Virus record (IMG/VR): IMGVR_UViG_3300042868_007959
Location: 189,880-253,879 of that record
Length of the DNA: 64,000 nt
Direction: 5' to 3' (one strand)
Positions within the stretch are counted from its first letter, which is position 1, and every line of letters begins with the position of its first letter. A program made the translations under genes and the position numbers. This document shows, in pieces, positions 3,686 through 30,400 of the stretch. The notes beneath the pieces were generated by a model. It saw nothing but the letters and a program-made list of their open reading frames with translations, did no database searches and had not been told where the DNA came from.

Positions 3686-3756
3686 CTTAATTTTTTTTTA
3701 ATTTTTTTTTATTAGTTGTATTATTTATTATATAAATATTGAATTTTTAGAAAAAT

Positions 3757-6753: not shown

Positions 6754-6777
6754 ACTAATAAATATTGTGGTTAATTA

Positions 6778-6803
6778 AAAAACCCAATCTAAGATGGGTT
6801 TTT
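6778..6803. terminator. hairpin, probable bidirectional terminator
   Basis: AAAAACCCA..TGGGTTTTT. Confidence 0.6.
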
Positions 6804-8194: not shown

Positions 8195-11044
8195 TTAAAT
8201 GTTATCAAAACTAGCACCTGTGTTAGTGATATTAAATTCTATCGAAATAAATTCTAATGATCTAGTTGGTTTGATAAATATTCTTCCGTTTAATTCGTTT
8301 CTGTCAATAGATTCTGGTGTATCATCTAATGTTACTCTAAAATCAGTTAACCCTCTTTCTTTTCTGATATTATCTAATATTGGATTAACTAAACTTAAGA
8401 ACTGATTTCTTACAACATCATCATTTTGTTCAAACAACAATCTGATAGATACTGCGGATATAAGTTTTCTAGCTTGTAGTAACAATCTTCTAACGTTAAT
8501 TCTGTTAAGAGCACTTTCTCTAACTTGTAATGTTTTATTACCAAAGATAACAACCCCTACATCAGAGAATGTCGCCATAGGATTAATTCTACCTTCATAT
8601 AAATTATCTCTTTCGTCTAATTTAAGTTTAACTCTAGCTTTAATTGCGGTAGTTGTACCTCTATTTAAACCTGCTGCTGCGAACCAAGGGAATGCAACAT
8701 TATCAGTCAATGCGATGTTTCTTACAACTTCTACAGTTGGTGGTAACCAAACATATCTATTATTTTCTGAATCATTCATTTGTAACCAAGGCCAATATGT
8801 AGCGGAATAATTAGAATCTATTCCTGAATCTTCTACAACACTAACTGCCTCTTCCGCTGACAATACAACCCCATCCACATCTACGTCAGGTGTGGTAATT
8901 ATATATAGTGAATCCGCTCTATCAGTTTCAACCATATCAACTGCATTTTCAATTAAACTTGTATTATCTCTCAAATCAATACCAGGTGTTGCAAATACAT
9001 TTATATTTACCGCTTCTGGATTATTAAATGTGTAAATACCATTTAAAAATGCGTAATAATCAGAAGTTATTCCGTCATCACCTTCACTAGTGACAAATGT
9101 ATTAAATATTCCTTTACTTAAACCTAAAATTCCTTTAGTTCCGTTTTTAACGTAATTATCACCATTAGTTCTTTTAGTTCTATATTCGTCCCATCCGTCC
9201 CATCCACCGTAAGGTGCGAAAGTGAATTTTCTAGACGCTATCTTTTCATATGGTCCACCTACTAATGATAAGTCAGTTGTAAATGCTGATATACCAACTT
9301 GTAAAGTAGGTACATAACTTACACTACCTAAATCTATTAAAGAACCAGTTGCGTTCACATCTAAATGGAAACCATCCGTTCTACCTGTATATATACCGTC
9401 ATTAACTGCATTTAATCCCTTATAATCAAAGAAATCTTGATCCACTCCAATATCACTATTTAAACCTAAGTAAGTTTTTCTTAATTTAGATGTATTGAAA
9501 TCTGAGTATTTAGTTTTATATTCTATTTTTGGTGGTAACGCAGTTCTATTAGAACCAACATATGTTCTATTTAACACACCCTCAAATCCTGATGGGAAAT
9601 GGTTACCTAAATCTGGATCGTTTCCGTCCCATAATTCAACCATAACACATTTACTTCTTAATGGAAATTCACCATCAATTGTACCAATTTTTCTTCCTAT
9701 AAATCCAATAGAATTACTATCCATAGATAAAGAAGAATATTTCTCTATTACATTAGGGTTAGCGTCTGTATCGTTAAAACTTCTAATTAACAAATCAAAT
9801 GTTTTATTATCAGGTTGAATGTTTATAATAGAGAACTTAATATCTTGATTTGCAGCATTACCGTCAGATATTGTTACAAACCTAAATAACCTTTGTAATG
9901 TTGACCCTACACCGATACCTTTAACTTCCGAAAGAACCCAAGGAGATAATGCAGTTTTCCAACCCTCTAAATAATTATTAAGGTTATTTGTAATTGTCCC
10001 ACCTATTTCTACAAATGATGTATCTAAACCTCTAACTTTACCTGCACTAATCAAATCTTCCAATACATTAGTATAGATTTCTTCTACCCATAATTCAGTT
10101 TCCTTATCTTGTGTAGATTGACCGAATACTCTAGGTAAGAAATTCTTTTTAGTTCTATCCATAGAAACTTCATAGTTAAAGTTTACCCCATTGAATGTGG
10201 TACCAGTAATATTAAATGAAGCCAATGAGTTTGATGGTAATAATGATGTATTAGTCATTATTGTGTCAGTGGCACCTGTTACATCATATGTTAATGTTTC
10301 TGTCCCATCATAAGATCCTCTCGATCTTAAAGTAGCAATTACACTACCATCTATATCTGTATAACAAGTTGCAGTATAACTAACAACTGTACCACTTGTA
10401 GTTCCTGTTACAAATCCTGTAGAACCACTCCCTTTTGTAAGGACTGTCATATCAAATGTTGCCCCACTGAAATTACAACCATTTTTAACATAATATGGTG
10501 TAGTTACATTAATTGTGTCACCAGTACTTAATAAACCTACTGATGTAAATAACCCATTAATTTGTCCATCCGCATATAATGCAGTTAAATTAGGATCATT
10601 AAATGTAATAGTAACAGGTAATCCCGCAGTAGTTGCAGAATATGTTAATAGTAATGGGTAACTTGTTGTATTTGTAATACCAGTTGTAGTTGGATCCTCT
10701 GAAGAATCTAGTGTGATAGACCACGCATTACCAGCTTTATATCCTGATAAACCTAAAACTCTACTAACATATAATTGATTAGTTTGAGATAGGAACGATT
10801 TTGCGATGTAATTTAATTCATATTTGTTAAAACCATTAGCTTTATATTTTTCGGGGTTTAGTCCACCAAAATAACTAATGAATTCACCGTAATTAGAGAT
10901 GAATACAGGTTCAAAAGCTGGTCCTTTAGGTGTCTCACCTAATAGTCCCAACGTAGTAACCCCAACTTGTCTAGTTACGAATGTTAAGTCTTTTTCAGAT
11001 GTGAACACACCTGGACTCACAAAAATTCTGTCTGTTGATGCCAT
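8195..11044 (-). CDS. gp18: contractile tail sheath protein (T4 gp18-like)
   Basis: 949 aa; SPGVFTSEKD, GETPKGPAFEP, YWPWL, PWFAAAGLNRG, INPMATF, FGNKTLQ, RINVRRLL, FEQND, IKPTRSLEFISIEF. Confidence 0.95.
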   Translation of the reverse strand: MASTDRIFVSPGVFTSEKDLTFVTRQVGVTTLGLLGETPKGPAFEPVFISNYGEFISYFGGLNPEKYKANGFNKYELNYIAKSFLSQTNQLYVSRVLGLSGYKAGNAWSITLDSSEDPTTTGITNTTSYPLLLTYSATTAGLPVTITFNDPNLTALYADGQINGLFTSVGLLSTGDTINVTTPYYVKNGCNFSGATFDMTVLTKGSGSTGFVTGTTSGTVVSYTATCYTDIDGSVIATLRSRGSYDGTETLTYDVTGATDTIMTNTSLLPSNSLASFNITGTTFNGVNFNYEVSMDRTKKNFLPRVFGQSTQDKETELWVEEIYTNVLEDLISAGKVRGLDTSFVEIGGTITNNLNNYLEGWKTALSPWVLSEVKGIGVGSTLQRLFRFVTISDGNAANQDIKFSIINIQPDNKTFDLLIRSFNDTDANPNVIEKYSSLSMDSNSIGFIGRKIGTIDGEFPLRSKCVMVELWDGNDPDLGNHFPSGFEGVLNRTYVGSNRTALPPKIEYKTKYSDFNTSKLRKTYLGLNSDIGVDQDFFDYKGLNAVNDGIYTGRTDGFHLDVNATGSLIDLGSVSYVPTLQVGISAFTTDLSLVGGPYEKIASRKFTFAPYGGWDGWDEYRTKRTNGDNYVKNGTKGILGLSKGIFNTFVTSEGDDGITSDYYAFLNGIYTFNNPEAVNINVFATPGIDLRDNTSLIENAVDMVETDRADSLYIITTPDVDVDGVVLSAEEAVSVVEDSGIDSNYSATYWPWLQMNDSENNRYVWLPPTVEVVRNIALTDNVAFPWFAAAGLNRGTTTAIKARVKLKLDERDNLYEGRINPMATFSDVGVVIFGNKTLQVRESALNRINVRRLLLQARKLISAVSIRLLFEQNDDVVRNQFLSLVNPILDNIRKERGLTDFRVTLDDTPESIDRNELNGRIFIKPTRSLEFISIEFNITNTGASFDNI

Positions 11045-11075
11045 TTAATTTATTTTTTTTACTTATTATTAATTA

Positions 11076-11222
11076 ATTTCTTTAATTATAAATATGCGGT
11101 TTTTTATGAAAAAATATTTTTTGAGTTTGATAAAATAAATTTAGTATGAATTTTATCATACTTTTGTCATACTTATATATAAAAAGGAAATGAAGAGGGA
11201 TAAAAATTTAAAAATCACGCCT
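11076..11222. repeat. direct repeat copy 1 (late motif + operator + 5' end of RHH gene)
   Basis: identical to 13399..13534 except for an 11-bp extra TTTGTCATACT. Confidence 0.9.
11143..11173. promoter_or_regulatory. palindromic operator candidate with extra half-site
   Basis: AGTATGA-ATTTTA-TCATACT-TTTG-TCATACT just upstream of the RHH ORF. Confidence 0.55.
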
Positions 11223-11348
11223 CAAACGCATAAACTTCTAAAGGAATATTGTGAAAATAATGGACTTAAAATGTTTGCGTTTGTGGAGAAATTAATAAAA
11301 GAAAAGTGTAAACCAAAAACAGATTTATATGGTGATGAAATTAATTAA
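11190..11348 (+). CDS. ribbon-helix-helix (Arc/CopG-like) DNA-binding protein, copy 1 (not in ORF track)
   Basis: translated by hand: MKRDKNLKITPQTHKLLKEYCENNGLKMFAFVEKLIKEKCKPKTDLYGDEIN; beta(KNLKI)-helix-G-helix pattern. Confidence 0.7.
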   Translation: MKRDKNLKITPQTHKLLKEYCENNGLKMFAFVEKLIKEKCKPKTDLYGDEIN

Positions 11349-11364
11349 TAATCACCTTCACCTT

Positions 11365-11691
11365 TTAAATAATAGTTTTAATCTGATTATAAACAGTTAC
11401 TACGCCTTCACCATAAGAAGTATAGGAATCCATTTCAGTTTTAGTTTTATTTAATTCATTTAATTTTGTGCCGTCAGATAAAATATAAAAATTGGCTGAA
11501 TCCCATTTACCTTGAGTTGACACATCAATATCAATCCTATAAAGTAAATCATTAATCATAGCTTCAAAAATACCATCCATTAACTCTGTTAAATCATTTT
11601 GGTTATTTATGGTAAACGTACTTTCAGGTAAAGAATAAGTGTTAATAATTAAATTATTATATACTAGTTCTATGTTAAGATAATCATTCAT
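11365..11691 (-). CDS. hypothetical protein, possible fibre-associated chaperone
   Basis: 108-aa ORF immediately downstream of fibre-like gene 11697..13400. Confidence 0.5.
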   Translation of the reverse strand: MNDYLNIELVYNNLIINTYSLPESTFTINNQNDLTELMDGIFEAMINDLLYRIDIDVSTQGKWDSANFYILSDGTKLNELNKTKTEMDSYTSYGEGVVTVYNQIKTII

Positions 11692-11696
11692 TTTAA

Positions 11697-13400
11697 TTAA
11701 TTTTTAATAATCATTATATATAATTCACCCTGTCTATTAAGGGTTAAGTCGGAAGAAATTAAACCACTCATTGATATACCAGCAGAAGTATTCCTAAAAA
11801 TTGCTCTAACATCTAAAGTGTGGTTACCAACACTTAAATTTAATAGTGCCCCCATTGACCAAAGAGCACTCGTCCAACCAGCGTTTACGGTGTTTGGGTT
11901 AGTTGTTGTAATTCTTCTAAATGATCCGTTTGATAGTGGTCCAACACCATCCACCCATAACGCTATATCTACAGTAAAACTATTGCTCGAACCATTTGAA
12001 TTTTGCATACCACCTGATGTGAAAACATAAACTGAACAGTTATTAGGTACAGTTATTGTTTGTGTTAAACCAGGTATTAACTGATAACCAACAGTAGCGT
12101 TAGTCATCGTCAGTGTTGATGTACCATAAGAAGCATAAGTTGTTTGTCCTAATGTACCTACCCCAGCAACTAACTTACCTCCCGTATCGAATGATGCCAC
12201 TTGAGATGGTGTCCCCGATCTATTTGTTACAGTAACAGTAGATGCGGTAGTACTTTGTAACGAAGTATTTCCGTTAACAGTTAAATTTCCTGATACAGTT
12301 CCCCCACTTTTATCATACTTATTTGAAATATTAGTTTGAATTGTTTGAATAATAGTACAACCACTTAAAGTATCACAAGTTAAACCTTGTTGTGTCGGTA
12401 TTGTTGAAACCGCATATGAATAATGAGTGGACCCTTCCGTAACCAATGTTATTATATGTGCTTGATTACTCGTATTAGTTGCTCTAACTTTCGCAACTAT
12501 ACTATCACTAACCGTTAATGGTGTTCCACTAAAATAACCATCAGTAAGTTGCATTGATGGATTAGGTGAATTAGTCGTTACAGGTGTGGGGTCGGTTGCG
12601 AATAACAACGTTTCAGTCCCACCACTTGTTCTTTTATAAACCTCAACAAATATATTAAAAGATGCATTATTATTTTGTTTATAAGAATGTAAATAAAAAC
12701 TCCAAATACCTCCTGGTAATAATGTTCTGTTTAATGGATTTGTTTGAAAAGAGACAATTGTACCAGTTAAACCAGCATTAATTGTCACACCACTTGTTTG
12801 TTCAGACGCAGTGCTAGCAGTTGTACTCAAAAACCTATACCCATTTTTTGGTTGTGATAAGTTTAAGTAAAAAGTTTGACCTCCACCACCACCTCCCGTT
12901 GAGCCAGTAAAATTAATACCAAAATTTGGATATGTTCCATTCACACTTATATTCGTTCCACCTGTTATAGTTACCGTTTGGTCAGGTGATGTATTTACGA
13001 TGGTTACAAGACCGTTAGTTGTGTTTGCAGAAATTCCTGTTCCACCTGTTACACCACTTACAGGTAAATTAAAATATGTTGTAGCCGATATTGTTGTTGC
13101 GGTTAATCCATTCGTAAATGTTGTTGGTCCTGTTACAGTTCCACCACTAAACAATGTATCGGCATAATTAGGTACATTTAAATTATTACCTATATATGTA
13201 GATGGTCCTGAAGTTCCTGATGTGGTTAGAACTAATGATCCACCACCACCTCCTATTGCATTCGCAAGTTGTTGTACTGTTCCCTTATATGATGATCCAT
13301 ATGGATTTTGCGATGTATCACCAGTATTAACTATGTGAATTAAATCATTTAAACCTATACTACTAGCAATTAATCTATCGGTTAATCTTTGTTTACTCAT
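11697..13400 (-). CDS. tail fibre/appendage-like protein
   Basis: 567 aa, G/T/S-rich; YDKSGGTVSGNLTVNG fibre motif; C-terminal beta-sandwich-like LSVGNHTLDVR; ATATTTAT upstream. Confidence 0.65.
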   Translation of the reverse strand: MSKQRLTDRLIASSIGLNDLIHIVNTGDTSQNPYGSSYKGTVQQLANAIGGGGGSLVLTTSGTSGPSTYIGNNLNVPNYADTLFSGGTVTGPTTFTNGLTATTISATTYFNLPVSGVTGGTGISANTTNGLVTIVNTSPDQTVTITGGTNISVNGTYPNFGINFTGSTGGGGGGQTFYLNLSQPKNGYRFLSTTASTASEQTSGVTINAGLTGTIVSFQTNPLNRTLLPGGIWSFYLHSYKQNNNASFNIFVEVYKRTSGGTETLLFATDPTPVTTNSPNPSMQLTDGYFSGTPLTVSDSIVAKVRATNTSNQAHIITLVTEGSTHYSYAVSTIPTQQGLTCDTLSGCTIIQTIQTNISNKYDKSGGTVSGNLTVNGNTSLQSTTASTVTVTNRSGTPSQVASFDTGGKLVAGVGTLGQTTYASYGTSTLTMTNATVGYQLIPGLTQTITVPNNCSVYVFTSGGMQNSNGSSNSFTVDIALWVDGVGPLSNGSFRRITTTNPNTVNAGWTSALWSMGALLNLSVGNHTLDVRAIFRNTSAGISMSGLISSDLTLNRQGELYIMIIKN

Positions 13401-13534
13401 TTCTTTAATTATAAATATGCGGTTTTTTATGAAAAAATATTTTTTGAGTTTGATAAAATAAATTTAGTATGAATTTTATCATACTTATATATAAAAAGGA
13501 AATGAAGAGGGATAAAAATTTAAAAATCACGCCT
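13399..13534. repeat. direct repeat copy 2
   Basis: matches 11076..11222; palindrome AGTATGA-N6-TCATACT at 13466..13485. Confidence 0.9.
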
Positions 13535-13651
13535 AACACTCACAAATTACTTAAAGATTATTGTGAGGAAAATGGACTTAAGATGTTCTCTTTTGTTGAG
13601 AAATTAATAAAGGAAAAGTGTATTAAACCTAAAGATATTTATGGTGAATGA
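13502..13651 (+). CDS. ribbon-helix-helix DNA-binding protein, copy 2
   Basis: MKRDKNLKITPNTHKLLKDYCEENGLKMFSFVEKLIKEKCIKPKDIYGE; start set by comparison with copy 1. Confidence 0.7.
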   Translation: MKRDKNLKITPNTHKLLKDYCEENGLKMFSFVEKLIKEKCIKPKDIYGE

Positions 13652-13657
13652 AAATCC

Positions 13658-14917
13658 CTAATATAGAGTCCAACCCTGTAAACTACTAATAGACATCTCC
13701 ACTGAAGATGCAGTGGCACCATTAGTTCTTCCTGCCCAAAATGAAAGTAGTGTAGTATTTGATGGTAGGTTTGTTGTTATAGTTCCACTTTCTTGACCCA
13801 ATTGAGTTGTACCGCTAATAGAAGTTATTCTCCATTGTACTGTTGATCCACCAAATGCATTATATAATTCCAAAGAATAGAATTTTGTATTGGCAGCACC
13901 TGCAGTTCTATTAGATGGGAAATTAGTCGCATTTAATGGTATTTTAGTTGCGACACCACTTCCGTCATTATGGAAAATACTCATAAAAGAATCTGCTGGT
14001 GCGGAACCGACACCAATAATATTTAATAATGAACTTACTGCACTTGCACCTATAAGTGTATCATTTAAAGTACCTGATAAACCTGCAAAAAGAAATGAGT
14101 TTGAATTATAAGTAGATTCTGTACCAAAAGTGAAATTTAAAATTGTATAAAAACCTGTTCCCAAACAAAAATCGGTTGGTGATGCCCCTGCCGAATTTGC
14201 ACCTCTATATCCACAAGTTGAGTTTGACGATACGTTACTATTAAAACGACAACGTGGTATTTTTATGGTGCTTGATCCTGCTAAAAAAACAGTTGTTGGT
14301 GTACCCATTGCTACACCTGTTGCTAATCCTGAAACATATACAGTTGTTGTATTAAAACCAAAAGTATAATATCTATCAATATTATAAGCTTGTGGTGTTG
14401 TAAGTGAACCATAAGATGAATTAAAAGAAGTAGGTAAATTTACATATGTAGTTGCAGATATTGTAGAAAAACCACCATAACCATCTGCCCTAATAAAAGC
14501 CGTTTCAGATGATGTGTTATTTTCAACTATTATATTTTTATCCGTATTACTTCCAGTCCCCCCTTTAAATTGGACACCCCCTAATGTTGAGTTAGTGACA
14601 ATTTCTGGGTTTACTGAATTATTATATGCTTGTTGTAATGTTGTTGTTGATAATGGTAAATTTAAATAAGTTGTTGCGGATATTGTATTAGCCGTTAGAC
14701 CACCATTAATTACAAAATTACCAGTTACTGTATCACCTGTTCTATGTACTCTATCCCAACCAATAGGGATGATATCATTAGCGGTTGTACCTGACGTATA
14801 TAAAATAACATCTGAGGTATTTAATGCAATTTCACCTAATTTTATATCACCAGGTAATGGAATTTTACCTGGTACATTAGATCTTTTTAAAAGAAATGTA
14901 CTCTGTCTTTTAGCCAT
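13658..14917 (-). CDS. tail fibre-like protein with Mtd_N-like N-terminus
   Basis: LLKRSNVPGKIP...LGEIALNTSD N-terminal motif; ISATTY(L/V)NLP twice. Confidence 0.65.
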   Translation of the reverse strand: MAKRQSTFLLKRSNVPGKIPLPGDIKLGEIALNTSDVILYTSGTTANDIIPIGWDRVHRTGDTVTGNFVINGGLTANTISATTYLNLPLSTTTLQQAYNNSVNPEIVTNSTLGGVQFKGGTGSNTDKNIIVENNTSSETAFIRADGYGGFSTISATTYVNLPTSFNSSYGSLTTPQAYNIDRYYTFGFNTTTVYVSGLATGVAMGTPTTVFLAGSSTIKIPRCRFNSNVSSNSTCGYRGANSAGASPTDFCLGTGFYTILNFTFGTESTYNSNSFLFAGLSGTLNDTLIGASAVSSLLNIIGVGSAPADSFMSIFHNDGSGVATKIPLNATNFPSNRTAGAANTKFYSLELYNAFGGSTVQWRITSISGTTQLGQESGTITTNLPSNTTLLSFWAGRTNGATASSVEMSISSLQGWTLY

Positions 14918-14998
14918 ATTTATGACAATTTTTATAAATCCTAATTAAAGGTAATTAAAGCATATGTATGCTATTTTAATAAATATCATAAAAAATAA

Positions 14999-15023
14999 AA
15001 AAGGAAAGATTAACTTTCCTTTT
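14999..15023 (-). terminator. intrinsic terminator
   Basis: AAAAGGAAAG-ATTAA-CTTTCCTTTT. Confidence 0.65.
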
Positions 15024-15044
15024 ATCTTAATAAAGTATATATGA

Positions 15045-16262
15045 TTAATAAGAACCACCATCTAAAGTGTCAAATTCGGTAAGAACTCTAACACCTTTTA
15101 TACTACCTGCGGAACCGTTATCAGTAACACCCGTACTTCTTATAATTATATCATTTAATTGTGTAATCCACCCTCTATTAGAATATCCTGTTAAAGATGT
15201 ATATTCTGAAATATTAGGAACTTGTGTTGAGGTTAACCCAGTAAGATTTTGTAACCTAACAATATCAAAATTAACATCTCCATTAGAAACACCATTACCA
15301 TCTTGTATAGCAAAACCTGAATTAACAGATGTTAGTGTAGTACTACCAGTTGGGTTATAATTTAATGTTATATTAGGATCCTCAACATATAATTCACTTG
15401 TAAAAGCAGATATTGAAGGTCCAAATACTTTTAAACTACCTTGTATTGTAACATCACCTGAAGCCTCTATATTACCAACACCTAAAGTATTTGTACCATC
15501 TTCATATGTAAATTCACTTTCATCAACTAACAACCCACCACTACCAACATAAACAACTCTTCCTGATGTTAAATTACTAAATGATAATCCTGAAACAGTA
15601 TTAATTGATTCGGATAATGGTAATACACCACCATTTTGTTCAATACTTAATGTATTGGTTGCGGGATTATAAGTAAATCCTGTGACATATGTATCAGTAA
15701 AAGTGAGAGAAGATAAACTAACTGAATATGGTAAACCCCCATCATTTTTATAAAAATCAATTGAAGTAGTGCCACTATTATATGTACCACCCGTAGTAAA
15801 AGTATTTTCTGTAACTAAAATAAAAGGACCCCCAGACGGTGATATATTATATTCTAATTGTAGTGTTTGGTTATTGGAGTTATTTGTAGCCCCACTAGTT
15901 AAAGTTCCACCAGTAACATACGTACCTATTCCTTGAATCGATGATATATCTGCCAATACAAAACCATTTGTTGTACCTGAAAGAAATTTACCTATTAAAC
16001 CACTACCTGATTGATTTTCATATTTAGTTATTCTATTCCTAATTTTTAACTCATAAAGATTTGATCCTACTTCGAAGAAAGTTGCATTACCTCCCGTACC
16101 CGCTGGAGTCCATTCAGATGTGGATGATGTTACACCTGAGAACATCATTATACCATCCGCAGTGTTTACTATAGGTTCTCCTTTAAGTAATGTTGCCCCC
16201 GAAAAAGGTGCATTAGGGACAGTATTATTTTTTATTACTAATTTAGTCTGTCTATTTGCCAT
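15045..16262 (-). CDS. tail fibre-like structural protein (Mtd_N-like N-terminus)
   Basis: LLKGEPIVNTADG; VEDPNITLN fibre motif; C-terminal LDGGSY. Confidence 0.65.
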   Translation of the reverse strand: MANRQTKLVIKNNTVPNAPFSGATLLKGEPIVNTADGIMMFSGVTSSTSEWTPAGTGGNATFFEVGSNLYELKIRNRITKYENQSGSGLIGKFLSGTTNGFVLADISSIQGIGTYVTGGTLTSGATNNSNNQTLQLEYNISPSGGPFILVTENTFTTGGTYNSGTTSIDFYKNDGGLPYSVSLSSLTFTDTYVTGFTYNPATNTLSIEQNGGVLPLSESINTVSGLSFSNLTSGRVVYVGSGGLLVDESEFTYEDGTNTLGVGNIEASGDVTIQGSLKVFGPSISAFTSELYVEDPNITLNYNPTGSTTLTSVNSGFAIQDGNGVSNGDVNFDIVRLQNLTGLTSTQVPNISEYTSLTGYSNRGWITQLNDIIIRSTGVTDNGSAGSIKGVRVLTEFDTLDGGSY

Positions 16263-16293
16263 TTTTTATTTTTTTTATAAATATTTTATTTTT

Positions 16294-16914
16294 TTAATAA
16301 GTACCACCCATTAAAGTATCATTTTGTATTATAGAACTATCTGCAGTTATAATTCTTAATTCACTATTACTGTCTAAACCTAAATTTAATGTAGGTGTAG
16401 TTACACTAATAGATGAAGTCCAAACCGTAGAATTACCACTAACAGTATTTATTTCTCTAAATCTTTTTAAATGTGTACCGACATCAGATGTTCCGTCATT
16501 AGTAGGTGTTATATTCCCACCCACTTCAGTATTACCCGTCACCAATAAATCACCATTTATAGTAAAACCAGTAACTTTATTTATTGTTGCGGAAAATTCT
16601 GCATTATCACCTCTAGTGATAATAAAAGTATTTTTATCATCGTATTCAAAATCTATGACACCCGAAGCTCCAGAAATGATAGTATTTATATTCCTATATT
16701 GGACTAATCCCGTCAAATTATCAATAACTAATATACGATTAAGTGTGTTGTTATTAGATACGGAATTTAATTTTAATTGATCTTGAACAGTTACGGGGGA
16801 ACAACCATATATATTACTTGTCCATATACCTGTACACGCAGTAAGTGTCTCAAACTCATTTGTGTTTGTTACAATATAATTTTGTTTTATATTTGAATTA
16901 TCACAACTACTCAT
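16294..16914 (-). CDS. fibre-associated structural protein
   Basis: NITPTNDGTSDVGTHLKRFREI fibre motif; C-terminal LMGGTY. Confidence 0.55.
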   Translation of the reverse strand: MSSCDNSNIKQNYIVTNTNEFETLTACTGIWTSNIYGCSPVTVQDQLKLNSVSNNNTLNRILVIDNLTGLVQYRNINTIISGASGVIDFEYDDKNTFIITRGDNAEFSATINKVTGFTINGDLLVTGNTEVGGNITPTNDGTSDVGTHLKRFREINTVSGNSTVWTSSISVTTPTLNLGLDSNSELRIITADSSIIQNDTLMGGTY

Positions 16915-17942
16915 AGTATTATTCCACTTATTTCTACTTCTGAAGATTTACTAACATCAGTTTTATTAACCTTAATGTATAATTGATCTCCGTTATTTAC
17001 GGTAAATGGTAAAGTTACTATACTACCATTTTTCTTAAATAAAACTGAATTTGCATTTGTCACTGTTAAATCATTATACGTTGCAGATATATCTATTGGT
17101 ATTGTGACATTGTTTGTCCCTGATTTAAAAATAACATTTAAACATATCCCATTATTTTTAGTATCTAAATTAACTTGATACGATGCCCTATATAATTCTT
17201 CACTAATTTCGAAAAAATTTATTGCTCTACTTATTGCTGGTGTTACTATAAAATCATCTTCGTCTAATAAGTAACCTAACATTTTTATGGTAAATAGTTG
17301 AACATAATATTTCCTCTCATCTAAGTTTGATATCACACTCTCATCACCAATACTATCCATTATTAATGGTATTGGGTGACCGTTAACTTTAATATATTTT
17401 TCTAAAGATGAAAAAGAAGTTAACATTTTTCTATTCATAAAATTTAAATCCCTCATCCTATTACAAAATAATCTAACTTCATACAGAATATCAACTGATA
17501 CTGGTTGTGGAATTTTATAAATATCGAAACCATTTCTATTACCATCCCATGTCGGTATCTTCATATAAGTGAAGGTAGGTCTACCAGGTATATTAAATTT
17601 TCCCGCATAATTAGTACCTTGTTGTGCATCAGGTTTTCTTACTATGGTAATAAATGGTAGTTTTATATTTTTATCTATATCGGTAAATTGCCAAGTTTTA
17701 GAGAATTCCGCCCATCTTTGTGCACTTAAAAATAAAACAGGAACTTTTTCTCCCGCCAAACTTAAATCTATATCATTATTTACATAGTTAATCATTTCAC
17801 TATCCATATCTTCATGTAAAATACCTTTAGGGAGATAAGTTCCTTTATCGGCAATTTCATCAAGTATACTTTGTCTCTGCTCAAAACCTTGTTTATGAGG
17901 AGTTATGTTAACATATTTTTTATAATTTTTTGGTAAACCCAT
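16911..17942 (-). CDS. tail terminator / sheath stabiliser (T4 gp15-like)
   Basis: KVPVLF..QRW, LPFITIVR, PQPVSVDILYEV; located next to gp14-like gene. Confidence 0.65.
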   Translation of the reverse strand: MGLPKNYKKYVNITPHKQGFEQRQSILDEIADKGTYLPKGILHEDMDSEMINYVNNDIDLSLAGEKVPVLFLSAQRWAEFSKTWQFTDIDKNIKLPFITIVRKPDAQQGTNYAGKFNIPGRPTFTYMKIPTWDGNRNGFDIYKIPQPVSVDILYEVRLFCNRMRDLNFMNRKMLTSFSSLEKYIKVNGHPIPLIMDSIGDESVISNLDERKYYVQLFTIKMLGYLLDEDDFIVTPAISRAINFFEISEELYRASYQVNLDTKNNGICLNVIFKSGTNNVTIPIDISATYNDLTVTNANSVLFKKNGSIVTLPFTVNNGDQLYIKVNKTDVSKSSEVEISGIIL

Positions 17943-17943
17943 A

Positions 17944-18456
17944 TTACATTCCGTTAAATTCGTCTAAGTCAGTTGGTACACAAGTTATTGATCGATAAAA
18001 CCCTTTATACCCACCAATAGTATGTGTGTTATCTGAGAATAATTTACCGTCATTTGAAACTGTAAAATATTTAATTTTTGTTTCTGTTTCAGGATACGCA
18101 ATATAATCACCATAATTAATATCTATACCTAATTCATCCAATTGATCTTGATATACACCTAAAGTAATATTACCCCTTTCAAGTAATCTTAATGAACCAT
18201 CACTGTTATAACTTTTATTGGTAGGTGTTGCGTAACTAAAACTAACAGGTATTTCTATTGGTGGTTTGAACCTTATTTCGTTCTTACCTGCCTCACCATA
18301 AATATCATCATTGGTGGTATCAACTCTATCGACACGATAAAGAATTACCTTAATATTGATATCTCCTTCTAACCACTCTCTTCCAAAGTCAATTTCTAAT
18401 TCAAAATCGTCTTGTGAAAAAAATTTGTTTAATCTTTCTATTGGTACTTTACGCAT
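17944..18456 (-). CDS. neck/head-closure protein (T4 gp14-like)
   Basis: VILYRVD, DDIYGEA...FKPPIEI, GDYI motifs. Confidence 0.65.
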   Translation of the reverse strand: MRKVPIERLNKFFSQDDFELEIDFGREWLEGDINIKVILYRVDRVDTTNDDIYGEAGKNEIRFKPPIEIPVSFSYATPTNKSYNSDGSLRLLERGNITLGVYQDQLDELGIDINYGDYIAYPETETKIKYFTVSNDGKLFSDNTHTIGGYKGFYRSITCVPTDLDEFNGM

Positions 18457-25751: not shown

Positions 25752-27416
25752 TTAACCATTATTAATTTCTTCCCTTATTGTTGTAATATCTAAACTACAA
25801 CCAAATAATTTAAATTTACTAATCCCACCTTCAAAAGTACCAGCAAAATTTTCTTGTAGTACTAAGTTTTCGTCCTTAATATCAGGACCATTAACCGTAT
25901 TAGATTCTATTAATCCTTGAGTACCTCCACCTAAACTGTAATTAAATGGAACACCTTGTTGTTTTTCTCTATATTCATCTAATTCCCTAAAAATAAACTC
26001 ATCAAAATCCTCTAAAGTCCATTTTAAATATCCATTAACATAAACTGTTAATACACCTTTTCTTCTAGGTTTATTCACTAATTCACATTGGGTATATTGT
26101 TCATAAGGTTTAAACCTTATTGCAACATTTGTCCACACATCTTCTGATATAATACCAGGAGAACTATAACATTCATAAATACTAGTTCCTGTAACATATT
26201 TTGTGGTTACCGAAGTTGCCGTAGTAGTTCCTGTACACCCACATCCACATTGTTCATGACAATCTACTATTGTCGTTGCCGTAACTGCCGAACAAACTCC
26301 TGTCAATATTATAGTTCTAAACCCTATACTTCCATCATCCTTAATTCTAAACCCTAATGCGTTATCTATAATGTCCGCATTTTTATCTTTTTCTTGTGTT
26401 ATTTCTGTAGTTATACCACTAAAACAACAACAACTTGATGGTTGATATACTAAAAAAGGATTATTATTTAACACTTCTTCTGAAATCACAGGTGGGGGTA
26501 AAGGATATCCTGATGAGGTAGTATACCCAGTTTCACCACTAAATAAATCCCAAAACTTATTTTCTGCCCTAGTACCCATATAAAAGAAAAATCCTTTATT
26601 ATTAGGGTATGTATTATTAAGTGTATTACCTACACAAGATTCGGAACTTTTATTTAATAAGAACGTTGCCGTCCACCCATCTAAACATTCGACATCTAAA
26701 CCACCTAATCTTTCAGGTAATATTTGATAATTGTATGGAATTGGTTTTGTATCTAAATAACATTGATACGCCTTATTCGGATCGACAGTACAAGTTTGTC
26801 CTGTTGTATCACCCGTACCACAACAATCAGTTACGGTGTCTCCACTACAAATAGTAGGACATCTAAACCAATCTAACGGCCAAATAAATTTATTATCACT
26901 TATTTCATTGAAATAGGTGATATCAGATAATTTAAAGAATCCTTGATAAAACCCACCACATAATTGAGAATATCTACCTACCTCTAAGTCCGTAAGAACA
27001 TCTATTGGGTAATCGTATGTACAACCAGTAACTCTAGTCATAGAGAACCTTGTATCTGCTGATGTTAATGTTAAAGATGATCCTGTAAACGATGATAAAA
27101 AAGTTGCCCCACTGGTTGGTGTATTACAATCGTATATTATAAAACCATTATCAATACCCGTCAAACCAATATCATTTAATGTGATTCCACTACCATTGAT
27201 TGTTGCACCTGTCCAAGTAGTTAAACTATAAAGAGTATTTCCTGAGTAACACGCATCATTATCAATATCAATGTCAACTAAAATACAATCCTCTAATATT
27301 TGATCATTATCTTGTTCGTCTGTACAATCATAACATAAAAATAAGTCCCAGTAGTCACTGTTACTTAATCTCATTTTTAAACAATTGTCAAAATTATGTT
27401 GGTATATATTACTCAT
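25752..27416 (-). CDS. Cys-rich virion protein with LamG/ConA-like C-terminal domain
   Basis: WTNVAIRF, LTVYVNG, LGGGTQG, FEGGISKFKLF. Confidence 0.55.
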   Translation of the reverse strand: MSNIYQHNFDNCLKMRLSNSDYWDLFLCYDCTDEQDNDQILEDCILVDIDIDNDACYSGNTLYSLTTWTGATINGSGITLNDIGLTGIDNGFIIYDCNTPTSGATFLSSFTGSSLTLTSADTRFSMTRVTGCTYDYPIDVLTDLEVGRYSQLCGGFYQGFFKLSDITYFNEISDNKFIWPLDWFRCPTICSGDTVTDCCGTGDTTGQTCTVDPNKAYQCYLDTKPIPYNYQILPERLGGLDVECLDGWTATFLLNKSSESCVGNTLNNTYPNNKGFFFYMGTRAENKFWDLFSGETGYTTSSGYPLPPPVISEEVLNNNPFLVYQPSSCCCFSGITTEITQEKDKNADIIDNALGFRIKDDGSIGFRTIILTGVCSAVTATTIVDCHEQCGCGCTGTTTATSVTTKYVTGTSIYECYSSPGIISEDVWTNVAIRFKPYEQYTQCELVNKPRRKGVLTVYVNGYLKWTLEDFDEFIFRELDEYREKQQGVPFNYSLGGGTQGLIESNTVNGPDIKDENLVLQENFAGTFEGGISKFKLFGCSLDITTIREEINNG

Positions 27417-30400
27417 CTAATTAAATATAGGGCGATATCATTATTTATATCTTTCATTTTTATCCACCTACTTGGTATCTGTTGATTTTTCAGTACCCTT
27501 ACTTGACCGACTAACCCAACAACATTCCATTCAGGTCTTTCAGATCTAGGGATATATAACATATTAGGATCAAAATTTTGACTTAATTTTGGTGTTTGTT
27601 CCGTTATTGTTTTGTAAATGGTTTCACCACTTTCAGTTATATAATCTATCATATCATATGAATAGTCTTCCATAATATATCTACCCCATTCATCTTTTTC
27701 ATATTTTCCTACCCATTCATCTGCGGTACCTCCTTCATTGTTACCGATAAGTGTAGGGTTAGAAGAAATAACACCCATAGCGTTATTTGCGTCAACACAT
27801 ACTTTTATTTTATCATCTACTAATTCGACTACTGTACCGTAAGGTATTGAATCTCCTGATAAAGATTCAAAGTATTCAGCGTAATCCGCACCAGAGTTAT
27901 ATGTTGCACCAGCACCATAAACATTACCAGCCGAATCGACTCTAAATGCATTTGATCTAGAGGCGTTACTGGTACCTTTACCGATAATGAAGTATTGGTT
28001 AGCGTTTGTTATATTATTATATTTACCAGATACGTGTTGTCCTGCTTCATAAGCAATAGTACCCAAACCCTCTGAGTGAGAATATTGAGTAGTTGCAGAT
28101 GTTTGGTAACCCTCTGAGTGCGAATAATCTCCAGTAGATTCTGTGGAATACCCTTCAGCGTGAGAATATTGACCAATAGATTCTGACCTAAAACCTTCAG
28201 AATGTGAATATGCCCCAATAGAATCAGTATCATATCCTTCAGAATGTGAAGCAGTACCTTGAGCTATTGTAAATCTACCTTCAGAATGTGAATATGACCC
28301 AATAGAATCTGATCTATCACCTTCAGCGTGTGAACTAATTCCTGATGCCAAAGTCTGAAACCCTTCTGAGTGTGAATAGGAAGTTGTTGCAGATGTTTGG
28401 AATCCTTCAGCGTGTGAAGCAATTCCTGATGATAAAGTTTCTCTACCTTCAGCGTGTGAATGTGAATTAGTTGCACTTGTTTGAAGTCCTTCAGCGTGTG
28501 AACTTAGTCCTGATGCCAAAGTTTGTTGACCTTCAGCGTGTGAATAGAAAGTTGTTGCACTTGTTTGATTGCCTTCAGCGTGTGAACTAGTTCCTGTAGC
28601 CAAAGTCTCTGCCCCTTCAGCGTGTGAATAGGAAGTTGTTGCACTTGTTTGATCACCTTCAGCGTGTGAATATACCCCCAATGCTAAAGTAAAGCTACCT
28701 TCAGCGTGTGAACCAGTTCCTGATGCCAAAGTTTGGTTCCCTTCAGCGTGTGAATAGGCAGTTGTTGCAGACGTACTTATACCCTCTGCGTGAGAAGCAG
28801 TTCCTGACGCTAAAGTACCTATACCTTCAGCGTGTGAAGAGTAAGTTGTTGCACTTGTCGGATTAGGAACTAACCCAGATTTACCGAAAAATACCCCACC
28901 TTCTGCGTGTGAAGCAGTTCCTGAAGCAATATTACCGACACCTTCAGAGTGTGAATATTGTCCTGATGCAGTTGTTCCCGATCCTTCAGCGTGTGAAGCA
29001 GTTCCTGATGCAATAGTTGTACCTCCTTCAGCATGAGAAACATCTCCAGATGCTAAAGTACTTACACCTTCAGAGTGTGAATTAATACCACTAGCAGTTG
29101 TAGTATCCCCTTCAGCGTGTGAATTTTGTCCTGATGCCAAAGTCACACGTCCTTCTGCGTGTGACCCAAATCCTGATGCAATAGTTGATTGACCTTCAGC
29201 GTGTGAATGTCGTCCTGACGCTAAAGTACCTATACCTTCAGCGTGTGAAGAGTAAGTTGTTGCACTTGTTGGTATACCTACTAACCCTAACTTACCTAAA
29301 AATGCCCCACCCTCAGCGTGTGAAGCAATACCTGAGGCAATATTAAAATAACCTTCAGCGTGTGAATAATCACCACTTGCGGTTGTAATCCAACCCTCAG
29401 AGTGAGAACTAGTACCACTAGCAGTTGTCTGATAACCTTCAGAGTGTGAATAATCCCCACTCGCAATTGTTTGAAATCCTTCCGCATGTGATGTAGCCCC
29501 ACTTGCGGTTGATAAATTACCTTCAGCATGTGAATAATCACCGATAGCACTTGTTTGAACTCCTTCAGAGTGCGACATAATCCCAATTGCAAATGTATCC
29601 GCCCCTTCAGCGTGTGAAAAATCACCACTAGCAGTTGTTTGGAATCCTTCAGCGTGTGAACCAAAGTTTCCACCTGCAATTGTTTGATAACCTTCCGCAT
29701 GTGATGTATCACCACTTGCGGTTGTCTGATAACCCTGAGCCAATGATAATAAACCACTAGCGACTGATCCACTATTTTTAACCACTATTGCGTCTACACC
29801 TGTTGATGCCGTCCAAAATGTTACTCCTGATGTGGCACCCGATGCAGATAACCAAGTGGCGTTACCAACAGAGTCGGAAACTAAAACATAACCATTTGTT
29901 GCTCCTGATGTAACTTGTAAAGTTGTTGTTTTTGTCTTACCACTAACATCTAGTTTTTCAGATGGTGTCGTAGTTCCAATACCTAAATAACCTGCAATAT
30001 AATTATATCCCTCATCTTTTATATATATACCCCATCTATTTGTTGGTGGGGGGATATTTCCAGATCTTGTGGATTGATCATCCATATAAAACCCATATAT
30101 ATTATTTGTTGATCCATTATGGGTTAAAGTTATATCAAAACCATTCATCCAAAAACCAACATACTCATTTATAGTACCACCTGCAGTCAAATTCCTTAAT
30201 ACAGATGACGAACTTTTAACTATATCATTGTAAGTTCCTGTGTTTGTTTGAATTTGTACTACATTAATTTCGGATGTTAAAGCTTCATTACTATTTAATA
30301 ATGATAAATCACCTGTATATAATATTAGATTTGCCTTTGAATAAAATTCCCCATTTGTTGGTGATGTTATGTTTGGATATAATAGTGTACCGTCACCAAC

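What the first reader, a model, noticed from the sequence alone, without database searches (positions are those of the whole stretch)
11076..13651. Direct repeats bracket a removable tail-fibre cassette
Seen: 11076..11222 and 13399..13534 are identical over 136 bp, apart from an 11-bp extra half-site, covering the late motif, palindrome and first 11 RHH codons. The rest of the two RHH genes is clearly diverged. Between them lie a 567-aa fibre and a 108-aa partner. Recombination between the repeats would cleanly delete or amplify the ~2.3-kb fibre unit while leaving one intact promoter/RHH unit before the sheath. Inference: an accordion-like mechanism for gaining or losing receptor-binding fibres. 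The sharp identity boundary suggests recent recombination or conversion, but an assembly artefact is possible.
Basis: partly seen in the sequence, partly recalled or inferred. Interest (0 to 1): 0.7.

Follow-up and report, generated by a model that had tools for sequence, protein, structure and literature searches.

The report
Duplicated regulatory joint stacks fibre cassettes
An uncultured freshwater jumbo phage has two copies of the small regulator-and-promoter region that normally sits once before its tail-sheath gene, marking a recent recombination that placed two receptor-fibre gene sets one after the other; this is a clear example of ordinary modular phage evolution, not a new mechanism.

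Summary
Window 11076-11222 and 13399-13534 are identical except for 11 bp, identity ends sharply after codon 11 of two small RHH-like genes, and a 567-aa fibre and a 108-aa ORF lie between. The repeat is the divergent promoter/operator region plus RHH 5' end that lies once, directly upstream of the sheath gene, in about 160 related phage loci. Among relatives this region is only 72-91% conserved, so 136/136 identity is recent. RHH2 is a mosaic: 54/54 informative sites left of 13534 match RHH1, and right of it they match another lineage (p = 7e-13). The "extra" 11 bp is ancestral; the fibre-side copy lost it by slippage. The closest relatives carry one cassette (fibre-p108-RHH1-sheath), and this genome also has p206-p405-fib419-RHH2. 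The left joint fuses the sheath promoter exactly onto the fibre ATG. Independent assemblies show the same arrangement, so an artefact is unlikely. Deletion or amplification between the repeats is plausible, but nothing shows it: there is no deletion allele, depth is even, and no relative has two intact units. I read it as a recombination scar, closest to PeSL-type cassette shuffling in T4-type phages. Interest is moderate to low.

The parts
8195..11044 (-). Tail sheath gene (949 aa), the conserved right anchor of the locus.
   Evidence: It matches phrog_23 tail sheath at E 8.6e-61 and PF17482 above its cut-off. There are 327 relatives in IMG/VR.
11045..11075 (-). Sheath-specific leader, 31 nt, not part of the repeat.
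   Evidence: The alignment of the two copies loses identity here.
11076..11222 (.). Repeat copy 1 (147 bp), the ancestral divergent regulatory region plus RHH codons 1-11.
   Evidence: It is 100% identical to the single copy in close relatives L060 and L062.
11085..11112 (-). Promoter-like element facing the sheath (TTTTCA-16-TATAAT). It contains the gene-start motif ATATTTAT at 11088-11095, 43 nt from the sheath ATG.
   Evidence: Consensus scan. Genome-wide, 64 of 71 intergenic ATATTTAT copies lie within 150 nt upstream of a gene in the sense orientation. The block is conserved in 44 relatives.
11144..11172 (.). Candidate RHH operator, GTATGA-N6-TCATAC-N5-TCATAC: a palindrome plus a third half-site one helical turn on.
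   Evidence: It is the most conserved IGR block in 44 relatives. It occurs only in the two IGR copies of the 254-kb record.
11190..11348 (+). RHH1, a 52-aa Arc/CopG-like regulator, divergent from the sheath gene.
   Evidence: PHROG Arc-like repressor at E 1.5e-3 and PF10723 at 19 bits against a cut-off of 21; 15 of 17 family members hit PF10723. Exactly this protein sits next to the sheath in 19 other contigs.
11365..11691 (-). p108, a small ORF that always follows the fib567-type fibre. Its function is not established; a chaperone or partner role is inferred from position only.
   Evidence: It co-occurs with 542-732-aa fibres in L137, L140-L143 and L145. It has no family or atlas match.
11697..13400 (-). 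fib567, a probable trimeric tail fibre or receptor-binding protein with a TNF-like C-terminal head.
   Evidence: The AF2 C-terminal domain (about 418-567, pLDDT 75-93) matches TNF-like lectins (TMt 0.70-0.72) and the lambda gpJ tip. It belongs to a mosaic family of more than 640 proteins. It shares the ISATTYxNLP motif with fib419.
13399..13534 (.). Repeat copy 2 (136 bp), the same regulatory region fused directly to the fib567 start codon and lacking 11 bp (the third half-site).
   Evidence: The promoter motif at 13411-13418 now lies 10 nt from the ATG. The junction is spanned in an independent contig.
13467..13484 (.). Palindromic operator in copy 2; only two half-sites remain.
13502..13651 (+). 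RHH2 (49 aa). Gene callers give 60 aa from the ATG at 13469, which the 11-bp deletion puts in frame. It is a mosaic: codons 1-11 are RHH1-type and codons 12-49 come from another lineage.
   Evidence: Breakpoint test: 54/54 informative sites versus 17:5, p = 7e-13. The nearest relatives have T4 where RHH2 has the RHH1-type D4. The 3' part is 84% identical to L254 and 75% to RHH1.
13534..13535 (.). Recombination or conversion breakpoint.
13658..14917 (-). fib419, a second fibre-like protein, part of the extra cassette.
   Evidence: Its N-terminus matches phrog_35830, long tail fibre distal subunit, at E 3.5e-7. It has no close relative in IMG/VR.
14999..15023 (-). Terminator-like hairpin, followed by an ATATTTAT motif upstream of fib419.
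15045..16914 (-). p405 and p206, the remaining fibre-like genes of the extra cassette.
   Evidence: They are absent from the closest relatives. Distant versions occur in the same order in L072 and L073.
16911..18456 (-). p343 and p170, conserved tail-module genes that form the left anchor of the variable fibre slot.
   Evidence: They are conserved in relatives, while the distance from p343 to RHH ranges from 26 nt to about 5.6 kb.

Best explanation
The repeat is a duplicated copy of the locus's regulatory joint: a divergent intergenic region carrying a promoter-like element that faces the structural gene, a three-half-site operator, and the first 11 codons of a small RHH-type regulator. In this phage clade the joint occurs once, between a hypervariable tail-fibre slot and the conserved sheath gene.

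In this genome two alternative fibre cassettes have been joined head to tail, each ending in its own RHH gene. I infer the most economical history as follows. (i) An illegitimate joint formed between position -33 of the sheath leader and the ATG of the resident fibre gene, sharing only AAAT. This is the kind of joint a tandem duplication of the fibre-p108-RHH1-IGR unit would create. (ii) A homologous crossover at RHH codon 11/12 with a phage of another sub-lineage brought in p206-p405-fib419 and the 3' part of RHH2. (iii) Slippage between two TCATACTT repeats deleted 11 bp in the new copy.

The result has three features. The fibre gene now has its own copy of the sheath promoter at a typical distance from its ATG. 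The two RHH paralogues share an identical N-terminal DNA-reading segment and an identical palindrome, so they should cross-regulate. Two 136-bp direct repeats now flank the fib567-p108 unit and could mediate its loss, but nothing shows that this happens.

Shown: the repeat, its uniqueness, the breakpoint, the single-copy state in relatives, and the independent assemblies. Inferred: the order of events, RHH binding to the palindrome, promoter activity, and instability.
For: The repeat is exact and present in two copies. The IGR is only 72-91% identical among relatives, so the identity is recent. There is a mosaic breakpoint at 13534/13535 with p = 7e-13, and RHH2-like proteins of other phages differ at residue 4, inside the converted segment. 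One RHH sits next to the sheath in 159 distinct relatives, and none of the 84 with at least 2.5 kb of flank has two intact copies. Closest relatives with the identical RHH1 have p343-fibre-p108-RHH1-sheath. The left joint lies exactly at the fibre ATG with only AAAT in common. The 11 bp are present in relatives and flanked by 8-bp repeats. The same arrangement is found in a 7.4-kb contig of another sample and in a 281,944-bp contig. The repeat unitig is at about 1.5-2x the depth of its flanks, and the fibre unit is at flank depth. The operator is conserved and unique to these IGRs. The motif shows an orientation bias. A decayed second RHH flanks inserted genes in L220/L222 and L016, so this gene is a repeated site of rearrangement.
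Against: No raw or long reads were available. The Logan contigs (k=31) break at the repeat and cannot phase it. The donor of the p206-p405-fib419-RHH2 block was not found, so the order of events, and duplication versus gene conversion, cannot be settled. The RHH assignment rests on sub-threshold profile hits. The AF2 monomer gave one long helix, and the protein-DNA complex job was not folded. Promoter activity and 'late' timing are untested: the motif also precedes a helicase gene, and the sigma-70 scan was not enriched over shuffles.
Confidence: 0.7

Rival explanations
1. An active accordion or excision switch. On this view the 136-bp repeats recombine often during infection, so the population keeps a mix of one-, two- and multi-unit genomes (and excised circles), and selection uses this to tune the receptor-binding repertoire.
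For: The 136-bp perfect direct repeats lie 2.3 kb apart in a phage with a RecA/UvsX-like ORF. The crossover product would be a viable single-cassette genome. The left joint is of the type a tandem duplication produces. PeSL-flanked genes in T4-type phages do excise as mini-circles (PMC2839356).
Against: Depth of the fib567 segment equals the flanks in two runs (11.5 vs 12.9-14, and 18.3 vs 17.2-17.4). No contig on record has RHH2 next to the sheath. No relative has more than one intact unit. The two units are different cassettes, not copies of one another.
Confidence: 0.15
2. An older duplication kept uniform by gene conversion (concerted evolution). On this view the two regulatory regions have coexisted for a long time, and repeated conversion, favoured because both must answer to the same regulator, keeps the operator, promoter and DNA-reading RHH segment identical while the rest drifts.
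For: The identical tract covers exactly the functional elements: promoter motif, operator and the N-terminal RHH segment. RHH2's 3' part is as diverged from RHH1 as those of distant clade members.
Against: No other member of the clade has the two-unit arrangement, so it is not old. RHH2's 3' part groups with a different sub-lineage (84% to L254), not as an old paralogue of RHH1. The 11-bp indel sits unconverted in the middle of the tract.
Confidence: 0.1
3. An assembly artefact, in which two co-occurring strains (one with fib419-RHH2-sheath, one with fibre-p108-RHH1-sheath) were joined through the shared regulatory region.
For: The repeat is longer than k in the Logan contigs, which all break there. 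Single-cassette strains are common in other lakes.
Against: The fibre-ATG|repeat junction is a novel sequence that exists in contigs of three runs and does not occur in single-cassette strains, where p343 precedes the fibre. An independent 7.4-kb contig runs from fib567 through the whole repeat into RHH2 and fib419. A second long contig has the same neighbours. The 11-bp indel marks the two copies. All three segments have equal depth.
Confidence: 0.04

Closest known systems
PeSL mobile regulatory cassettes of T4-type phages (Arbiol et al. 2010, PMC2839356; Comeau et al. 2014, PMC4122927)
   Same: Both are short (about 100 bp) conserved regulatory sequences that flank variable genes, coincide with insertion, deletion and replacement boundaries between close relatives, and give the flanked gene its own promoter. 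In both cases recombination between two flanking copies would delete the gene and yield a circle.
   Different: PeSLs are early sigma-70 promoters joined to a stem-loop terminator, occur in many dispersed copies, and lie in regions rich in non-essential ORFans. This element has no terminator hairpin, contains an operator and the 5' end of a regulator gene, occurs once per genome in the clade (twice only here), and lies in the structural module. Mini-circles were demonstrated for PeSLs and nothing comparable is shown here.
Modular exchange of tail-fibre and adhesin genes in the T4 superfamily (e.g. gp37/gp38; Trojet et al. 2011, PMC3157838; abstract seen)
   Same: In both, the receptor-binding genes are the most variable virion genes and are swapped between relatives by recombination at conserved flanks. 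Here the slot between p343 and RHH holds from 0 to about 5 genes.
   Different: Here two alternative cassettes are retained in tandem instead of one replacing the other, and the right-hand homology arm is a regulator gene plus its operator, not fibre coding sequence.
Genomic accordions (tandem gene amplification and collapse in poxviruses; from my own knowledge of Elde et al. 2012, not checked here)
   Same: Both involve direct repeats created by a duplication-type joint, which could in principle allow expansion and contraction.
   Different: An accordion is defined by copy-number variation of the same gene under selection. Here the units differ, depth is 1:1:1, and no variants were found.
The Arc/Mnt immI region of phage P22 (from my own knowledge, not checked here)
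   Same: In both, small ribbon-helix-helix repressors bind repeated half-sites within a short region between divergent promoters.
   Different: In P22 the region controls antirepressor synthesis in a temperate phage. Here the partner transcription unit is the tail sheath (and now a fibre) of a T4-like jumbo phage, and binding has not been shown.

Membership tests
Ribbon-helix-helix (Arc/MetJ/CopG) regulators: RHH1 and RHH2 | A profile match to an RHH family above its curated threshold | tested here: inconclusive
   PF10723 (RepB-RCR_reg) scores 19-19.5 bits against a cut-off of 21, and 15 of 17 clade members hit it at E <= 0.01. PHROG Arc-like repressor gives E 2.9e-5 for RHH2 and 1.5e-3 for RHH1. 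The named atlas neighbours are all RHH-type (TacA, Arc, RHH_5, NikA) but only at lead level.
Ribbon-helix-helix (Arc/MetJ/CopG) regulators: RHH1 and RHH2 | A strand-helix-helix fold forming an intertwined dimer | tested here: inconclusive
   The AF2 monomer gives one continuous helix over residues 11-39 at pLDDT 75. A monomer model cannot show the dimeric fold. The complex job was not folded.
Ribbon-helix-helix (Arc/MetJ/CopG) regulators: RHH1 and RHH2 | An operator of inverted or tandem half-sites about one helical turn apart, next to the regulator's own start | tested here: met
   GTATGA-N6-TCATAC-N5-TCATAC lies 18-46 nt upstream of the ATG. It is the best conserved IGR block in 44 relatives and is unique to these IGRs in the genome. 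Binding itself was not tested.
PeSL-type mobile regulatory cassettes | A composite of a sigma-70-like promoter and a stem-loop terminator | tested here: not met
   Promoter-like hexamers are present, but there is no terminator-like hairpin inside the repeat.
PeSL-type mobile regulatory cassettes | Many dispersed copies per genome | tested here: not met
   There are only two copies in 253,879 bp and one per locus in relatives.
PeSL-type mobile regulatory cassettes | Position at indel or replacement boundaries between close relatives | tested here: met
   It forms the right boundary of the variable fibre slot in all relatives examined, and the breakpoint lies inside it.
PeSL-type mobile regulatory cassettes | Recombination between flanking copies yields deletions and mini-circles | not testable with these tools
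   Only k=31 contigs of the runs are held, and they break at the repeat.
Genomic accordion (tandem amplification and collapse) | Variable copy number of the unit within or between populations | tested here: not met
   Unit depth equals flank depth in two runs. None of 84 relatives has two intact units. No deletion allele is on record. Sampling is limited to assemblies.
Genomic accordion (tandem amplification and collapse) | A head-to-tail duplication joint | tested here: inconclusive
   The joint IGR(-33)|fibre ATG is what a tandem duplication of fibre-p108-RHH1-IGR would give, but the upstream unit is a different cassette.
Phage tail fibre / receptor-binding protein: fib567 | A C-terminal trimeric receptor-binding head domain | tested here: met
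   AF2 residues about 418-567 (pLDDT 75-93) form a beta-sandwich that matches TNF-like lectins PLTL (TMt 0.70-0.72) and BC2L-C (0.67), and the lambda gpJ tip. This is fold level only, from a monomer model.
Phage tail fibre / receptor-binding protein: fib567 | A profile match to a described fibre family | tested here: not met
   fib567 has no Pfam or PHROG hit. Only fib419 hits phrog_35830, at its N-terminus.
Site-specific inversion (shufflon/Gin-type) or DGR fibre variation | Inverted repeats with an invertase, or a template/variable repeat pair with a reverse transcriptase | tested here: not met
   The repeats are direct. None of the ten ORFs scanned (8195-18456) matches a recombinase or reverse-transcriptase family; ORFs beyond that stretch were not scanned.

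The most novel reading that the evidence does not exclude
The RHH-operator-promoter joint may be a dedicated portable linker. On this reading, phages of this abundant freshwater clade use it as the homology arm for plugging whole receptor-binding cassettes in and out, possibly through excised circles. Each added cassette would automatically receive a promoter that obeys the same RHH regulator, and this genome would be a captured two-cassette intermediate of a process that runs continually in nature.
Probability: 0.15. Interest if true: 0.6.

Novelty: new member of a known kind. Interest (0 to 1): 0.35.

Why it matters
It gives a base-pair-resolved natural example of how a large uncultured phage acquires a second set of receptor-binding genes: one illegitimate joint that fuses an existing promoter onto the new gene's start codon, and one homologous crossover inside a small conserved regulator gene. 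It also identifies a regulator-operator pair that is conserved next to the sheath gene across hundreds of freshwater jumbo-phage contigs and whose role is unknown. If the repeats do recombine at a measurable rate, the locus would be a simple natural system for studying gain and loss of host-recognition modules. As it stands, the finding fits what is already known about modular shuffling in T4-type phages.

Tried and rejected
- Near-identity DNA search against cultured phages found nothing. By protein, the best sheath match is 33% identical, so there is no annotated reference genome.
- Two exact-pattern scans of metagenome contigs, one with the repeat core and one with RHH2-specific sequence, found nothing.
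- Looking for the donor of the extra cassette with fib419 gave only distant relatives.
- Laying eight public runs was limited by the data. All are kept as k=31 contigs that stop 30 nt inside the repeat, so they confirm both novel junctions and the depths but cannot phase the repeat or reveal a deletion allele. The few 'joints' listed have 20-33-nt sides (the two touching the repeat, 20-21 nt) and I treated them as cross-matches from relatives.
- The RNA run covers only part of the sheath gene.
- The PDB sequence search with the RHH profile gave spurious SUMO matches on a 15-residue motif. The only RHH protein in the list (2kel, recalled from my own knowledge as SvtR, not checked here) had E 0.27.
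- The AF2 monomer of RHH was uninformative.
- The atlas search for p108 gave nothing.
- I rejected the T4 late-promoter reading (TATAAATA on the + strand). Genome-wide, the motif is oriented as ATATTTAT in the sense of the downstream gene.
- I rejected inversion and DGR systems because the repeats are direct and no recombinase or reverse-transcriptase family matched among the ten ORFs scanned (8195-18456).
Full report
**Context**

The window is the last 64 kb of a 253,879-bp linear IMG/VR virus record, estimated 78% complete, at about 29% G+C. The record comes from lake-water metagenomes. It encodes a tail sheath, a T4 gp13-like protein, a family-B DNA polymerase and an SNF2 helicase. No cultured phage is close: the best sheath match is 33% amino-acid identity, to a Microcystis phage. 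The clade is nevertheless abundant, with 327 sheath relatives in IMG/VR and 377 RHH homologues in the protein collection.

**The observation**

The two stretches 11076-11222 and 13399-13534 are identical except for one 11-bp indel, and they are the only copies in the record. Each lies between a minus-strand structural gene and a plus-strand small ORF. The structural genes are the sheath (ATG 11044) and the 567-aa ORF (ATG 13400). The small ORFs are RHH1 (11190-11348) and RHH2 (13502-13651).

On the right, identity stops after codon 11 of the small ORFs, and the remaining 114 nt are 74.6% identical. On the left, it stops exactly at the fibre start codon in copy 2 and 32 nt before the sheath ATG in copy 1.

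**What the repeated element is**

In every relative with enough sequence, one RHH gene lies divergently next to the sheath gene. Over all fetched loci there are 159 distinct RHH+IGR sequences. An alignment of 44 distinct intergenic regions shows three conserved blocks.

- The first block reads ATATTTAT(AA) in the sense of the sheath gene.
- The second is TAGTATGA..TCATACTTTTGTCATAC, a palindrome plus a third half-site 11 nt further on.
- The third is the first 33 nt of the RHH gene.

Genome-wide, 64 of 71 intergenic ATATTTAT copies lie within 150 nt upstream of a gene in the sense orientation. They usually follow a T-run and lie about 4-20 nt from the ATG. The motif is thus a gene-start or promoter-like signal pointing at the sheath and the fibre. 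It is not the T4 TATAAATA late promoter on the other strand. It also precedes a helicase gene, so 'late' is unproven. A consensus scan finds TTTTCA-16-TATAAT at this spot in both copies, although such sites are not enriched over shuffles in the region. The palindrome occurs nowhere else in the 254 kb beyond chance level.

The small proteins hit the CopG-like PF10723 just under threshold, in 15 of 17 members, and PHROG 'Arc-like repressor'. Their named atlas neighbours are all RHH families. A monomer AF2 model was uninformative, and the protein-DNA complex was not folded by the tool. I take them as probable RHH autoregulators with the palindrome as their operator. This is inferred, not shown.

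**Why the identity is recent and recombinational**

The 147-bp region is 72-84% identical in most relatives. It is 91% identical in a strain whose sheath protein is 99% identical, and 100% identical only in L060 and L062.

The 3' part of RHH2 is closest to RHH genes of another sub-lineage: 84% to L254, and at most 78-82% to the others. Those proteins read MKRT..., whereas RHH2 reads MKRD... like RHH1.

In a three-way comparison, all 54 informative sites left of 13534 tie copy 2 to copy 1. To the right, 17 sites tie it to L254, 5 to copy 1, and 14 are unique (Fisher p = 7e-13). RHH2 is therefore a mosaic with a breakpoint at 13534/13535.

**The 11 bp**

Relatives align to the 147-bp form without gaps, and the third half-site is conserved. 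The missing 11 bp are bounded by two copies of TCATACTT. So the fibre-side copy lost a half-site by slippage; the sheath-side copy did not gain one. One side effect is that an ATG inside the palindrome (13469) comes into frame with RHH2, which is why gene callers report 60 aa.

**Which DNA is extra**

Contigs that encode exactly RHH1 have p170-p343-[one fibre of 542-732 aa]-p108-RHH1-sheath, or in one case another three-gene cassette. They are 96-98% identical to the window from the sheath to fib567, and 94-95% identical in p343, p170 and the helicase.

In these contigs the fibre ATG is preceded by the p343 stop codon and a 24-nt spacer. In the window it is preceded by the copied regulatory region. 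The two versions share only AAAT at the joint. Compared with its nearest kin, the window has gained p206-p405-fib419-RHH2 plus the second regulatory copy.

A similar gene order, p343-p206-p405-fib419-like...RHH-sheath, exists in more distant relatives L072 and L073. The slot between p343 and RHH ranges from 26 nt (L130) to about 5.6 kb.

**The nature of the cassette**

fib567 has no family hit, but several features point to a fibre.

- It belongs to a large mosaic family.
- It shares the ISATTYxNLP motif with fib419.
- Its C-terminal 150 residues are modelled with confidence as a TNF-like beta-sandwich. That domain matches trimeric lectins and the lambda gpJ tip.

fib419 matches a long-tail-fibre PHROG at its N-terminus. 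The role of p108 is unknown.

**Is the arrangement real?**

Logan contigs of two lake runs hold 99% of the region, including both novel junctions.

- The contigs break 30 nt inside the repeat, as expected for k=31.
- The repeat unitig is at 25.9x against flanks of 11.5-14x in one run, and 27.1x against 17-18x in the other.
- The fibre segment is at flank depth.

An independent JGI sample has a 7.4-kb contig running from the first 830 nt of the fibre gene through the repeat into RHH2, fib419, p405, p206, p343, p170 and the helicase. The spacing between the fibre ATG and the upstream ATG is 69 nt, as expected for the 136-bp form. The exact RHH2 ORF and the exact fib567 protein are also recorded on a 281,944-bp contig with the same neighbours. 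A chimeric assembly is therefore unlikely, although no read-level phasing was possible.

**Is it an accordion?**

None of the evidence supports this.

- No contig has RHH2 beside the sheath.
- There is no depth deficit of the fibre unit.
- None of the 84 distinct relatives with at least 2.5 kb on the fibre side has a second intact RHH or an identical repeat.

Three loci do have a second, decayed RHH fragment. In L220 and L222 it flanks an inserted patatin-like gene that has its own motif-like sequence upstream. In L016 it flanks an HNH endonuclease gene. The RHH gene is thus a recurrent site of rearrangement, but these are one-way insertions.

**Mechanism proposed**

My inferred sequence of events has three steps.

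- A duplication-type illegitimate joint formed between sheath leader -33 and the fibre ATG.
- A homologous crossover in the conserved 5' end of RHH followed, with a phage carrying the other cassette.
- The 11-bp slippage deletion came last.

An alternative is an illegitimate join of two genomes followed by gene conversion of the regulatory region. I could not distinguish the two because the donor lineage is unsampled.

Either way the fibre now has the sheath promoter motif 10 nt from its ATG, a typical distance in this genome. Both RHH proteins keep the same N-terminal segment and the same palindrome. A RecA/UvsX-like ORF is present, though below threshold at 24.8 bits, so homologous deletion between the 136-bp repeats is plausible but unobserved.

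**Comparison with known systems**

The closest described system is PeSL-mediated modular shuffling in T4-type phages. There, about 100-bp promoter/terminator cassettes flank variable genes, mark indel boundaries and yield mini-circles (PMC2839356, PMC4122927). This element shares the logic but fails two defining features: it has no terminator hairpin, and it is not multi-copy. I therefore do not file it as a PeSL.

It also resembles fibre-module exchange in the T4 superfamily (PMC3157838). The poxvirus 'accordion' is only a formal analogy.

**Verdict**

This is a real, recent recombination scar that stacks two fibre cassettes. It is a new instance of a known kind of phage modular evolution, with a conserved but uncharacterised RHH/operator pair as its joint. 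Interest is 0.35.

Noticed in passing
whole genome; window examples at 3686-3740, 6754-6800, 14918-15044, 16263-16293: A gene-start motif ATATTTAT(A), often 11-16 nt after a T-run or a terminator-like hairpin, precedes about 70 genes in the sense orientation, mostly 4-20 nt from the ATG. Several copies form terminator-plus-motif composites, for example upstream of fib419, the 998-aa ORF and the 346-aa ORF, which recalls PeSL cassettes.
   Followed up: partly
window 11146-11193 and 13469-13651: The palindrome contains an ATG. In copy 1 this opens a 15-codon upstream ORF whose TGA overlaps the RHH1 ATG (ATGA). In copy 2 the 11-bp deletion puts the same ATG in frame, giving the 60-aa ORF that annotators call.
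   Followed up: partly
window 11348-11365 and 13651-13658: Each RHH gene converges on the 3' end of a fibre-module gene, with only 16 nt and 6 nt between the stop codons and no terminator-like site. RHH transcripts may therefore run antisense into p108 and fib419.
   Followed up: no
L220:4875-6254 and L222:5366-6742: In a distant sub-lineage (sheath about 50-55% identical), a 336-aa patatin-like gene sits between an intact RHH next to the sheath and a decayed RHH copy that starts at about codon 7 and has no start codon.
   Followed up: partly
L016:4724-5707: A 234-aa HNH-type endonuclease gene lies next to the RHH gene, with a remnant of the RHH 3' end (residues 23-50) beyond it. This looks like a homing-endonuclease insertion.
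   Followed up: partly
L138:14378-16159: In one close relative the SNF2 helicase ORF is 950 aa instead of 597 and carries a LAGLIDADG_3 hit, which suggests an intein or a homing-endonuclease insertion.
   Followed up: no
L130:2847-2873; L131-L134: Some relatives have no fibre gene at all between p343 and RHH (gaps of 26-300 nt), so in those phages the fibre genes must lie elsewhere or be absent.
   Followed up: no
window 28001-30000: There is a local G+C peak of 42.8%, against about 29% elsewhere, inside the 1714-aa ORF (27413-32557).
   Followed up: no
window 13063-13095, 14433-14465, 14655-14687: A short DNA repeat encodes the shared peptide motif ISATTY(F/L/V)NLP, once in fib567 and twice in fib419. 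Similar SATT motifs occur in fibre ORFs of L220. These could be internal recombination points for fibre mosaicism.
   Followed up: no
window 10415-11003: Two contigs from a freshwater metatranscriptome run match the 5' part of the sheath gene at 97-99%. They may be transcripts of a close strain or DNA carry-over.
   Followed up: no
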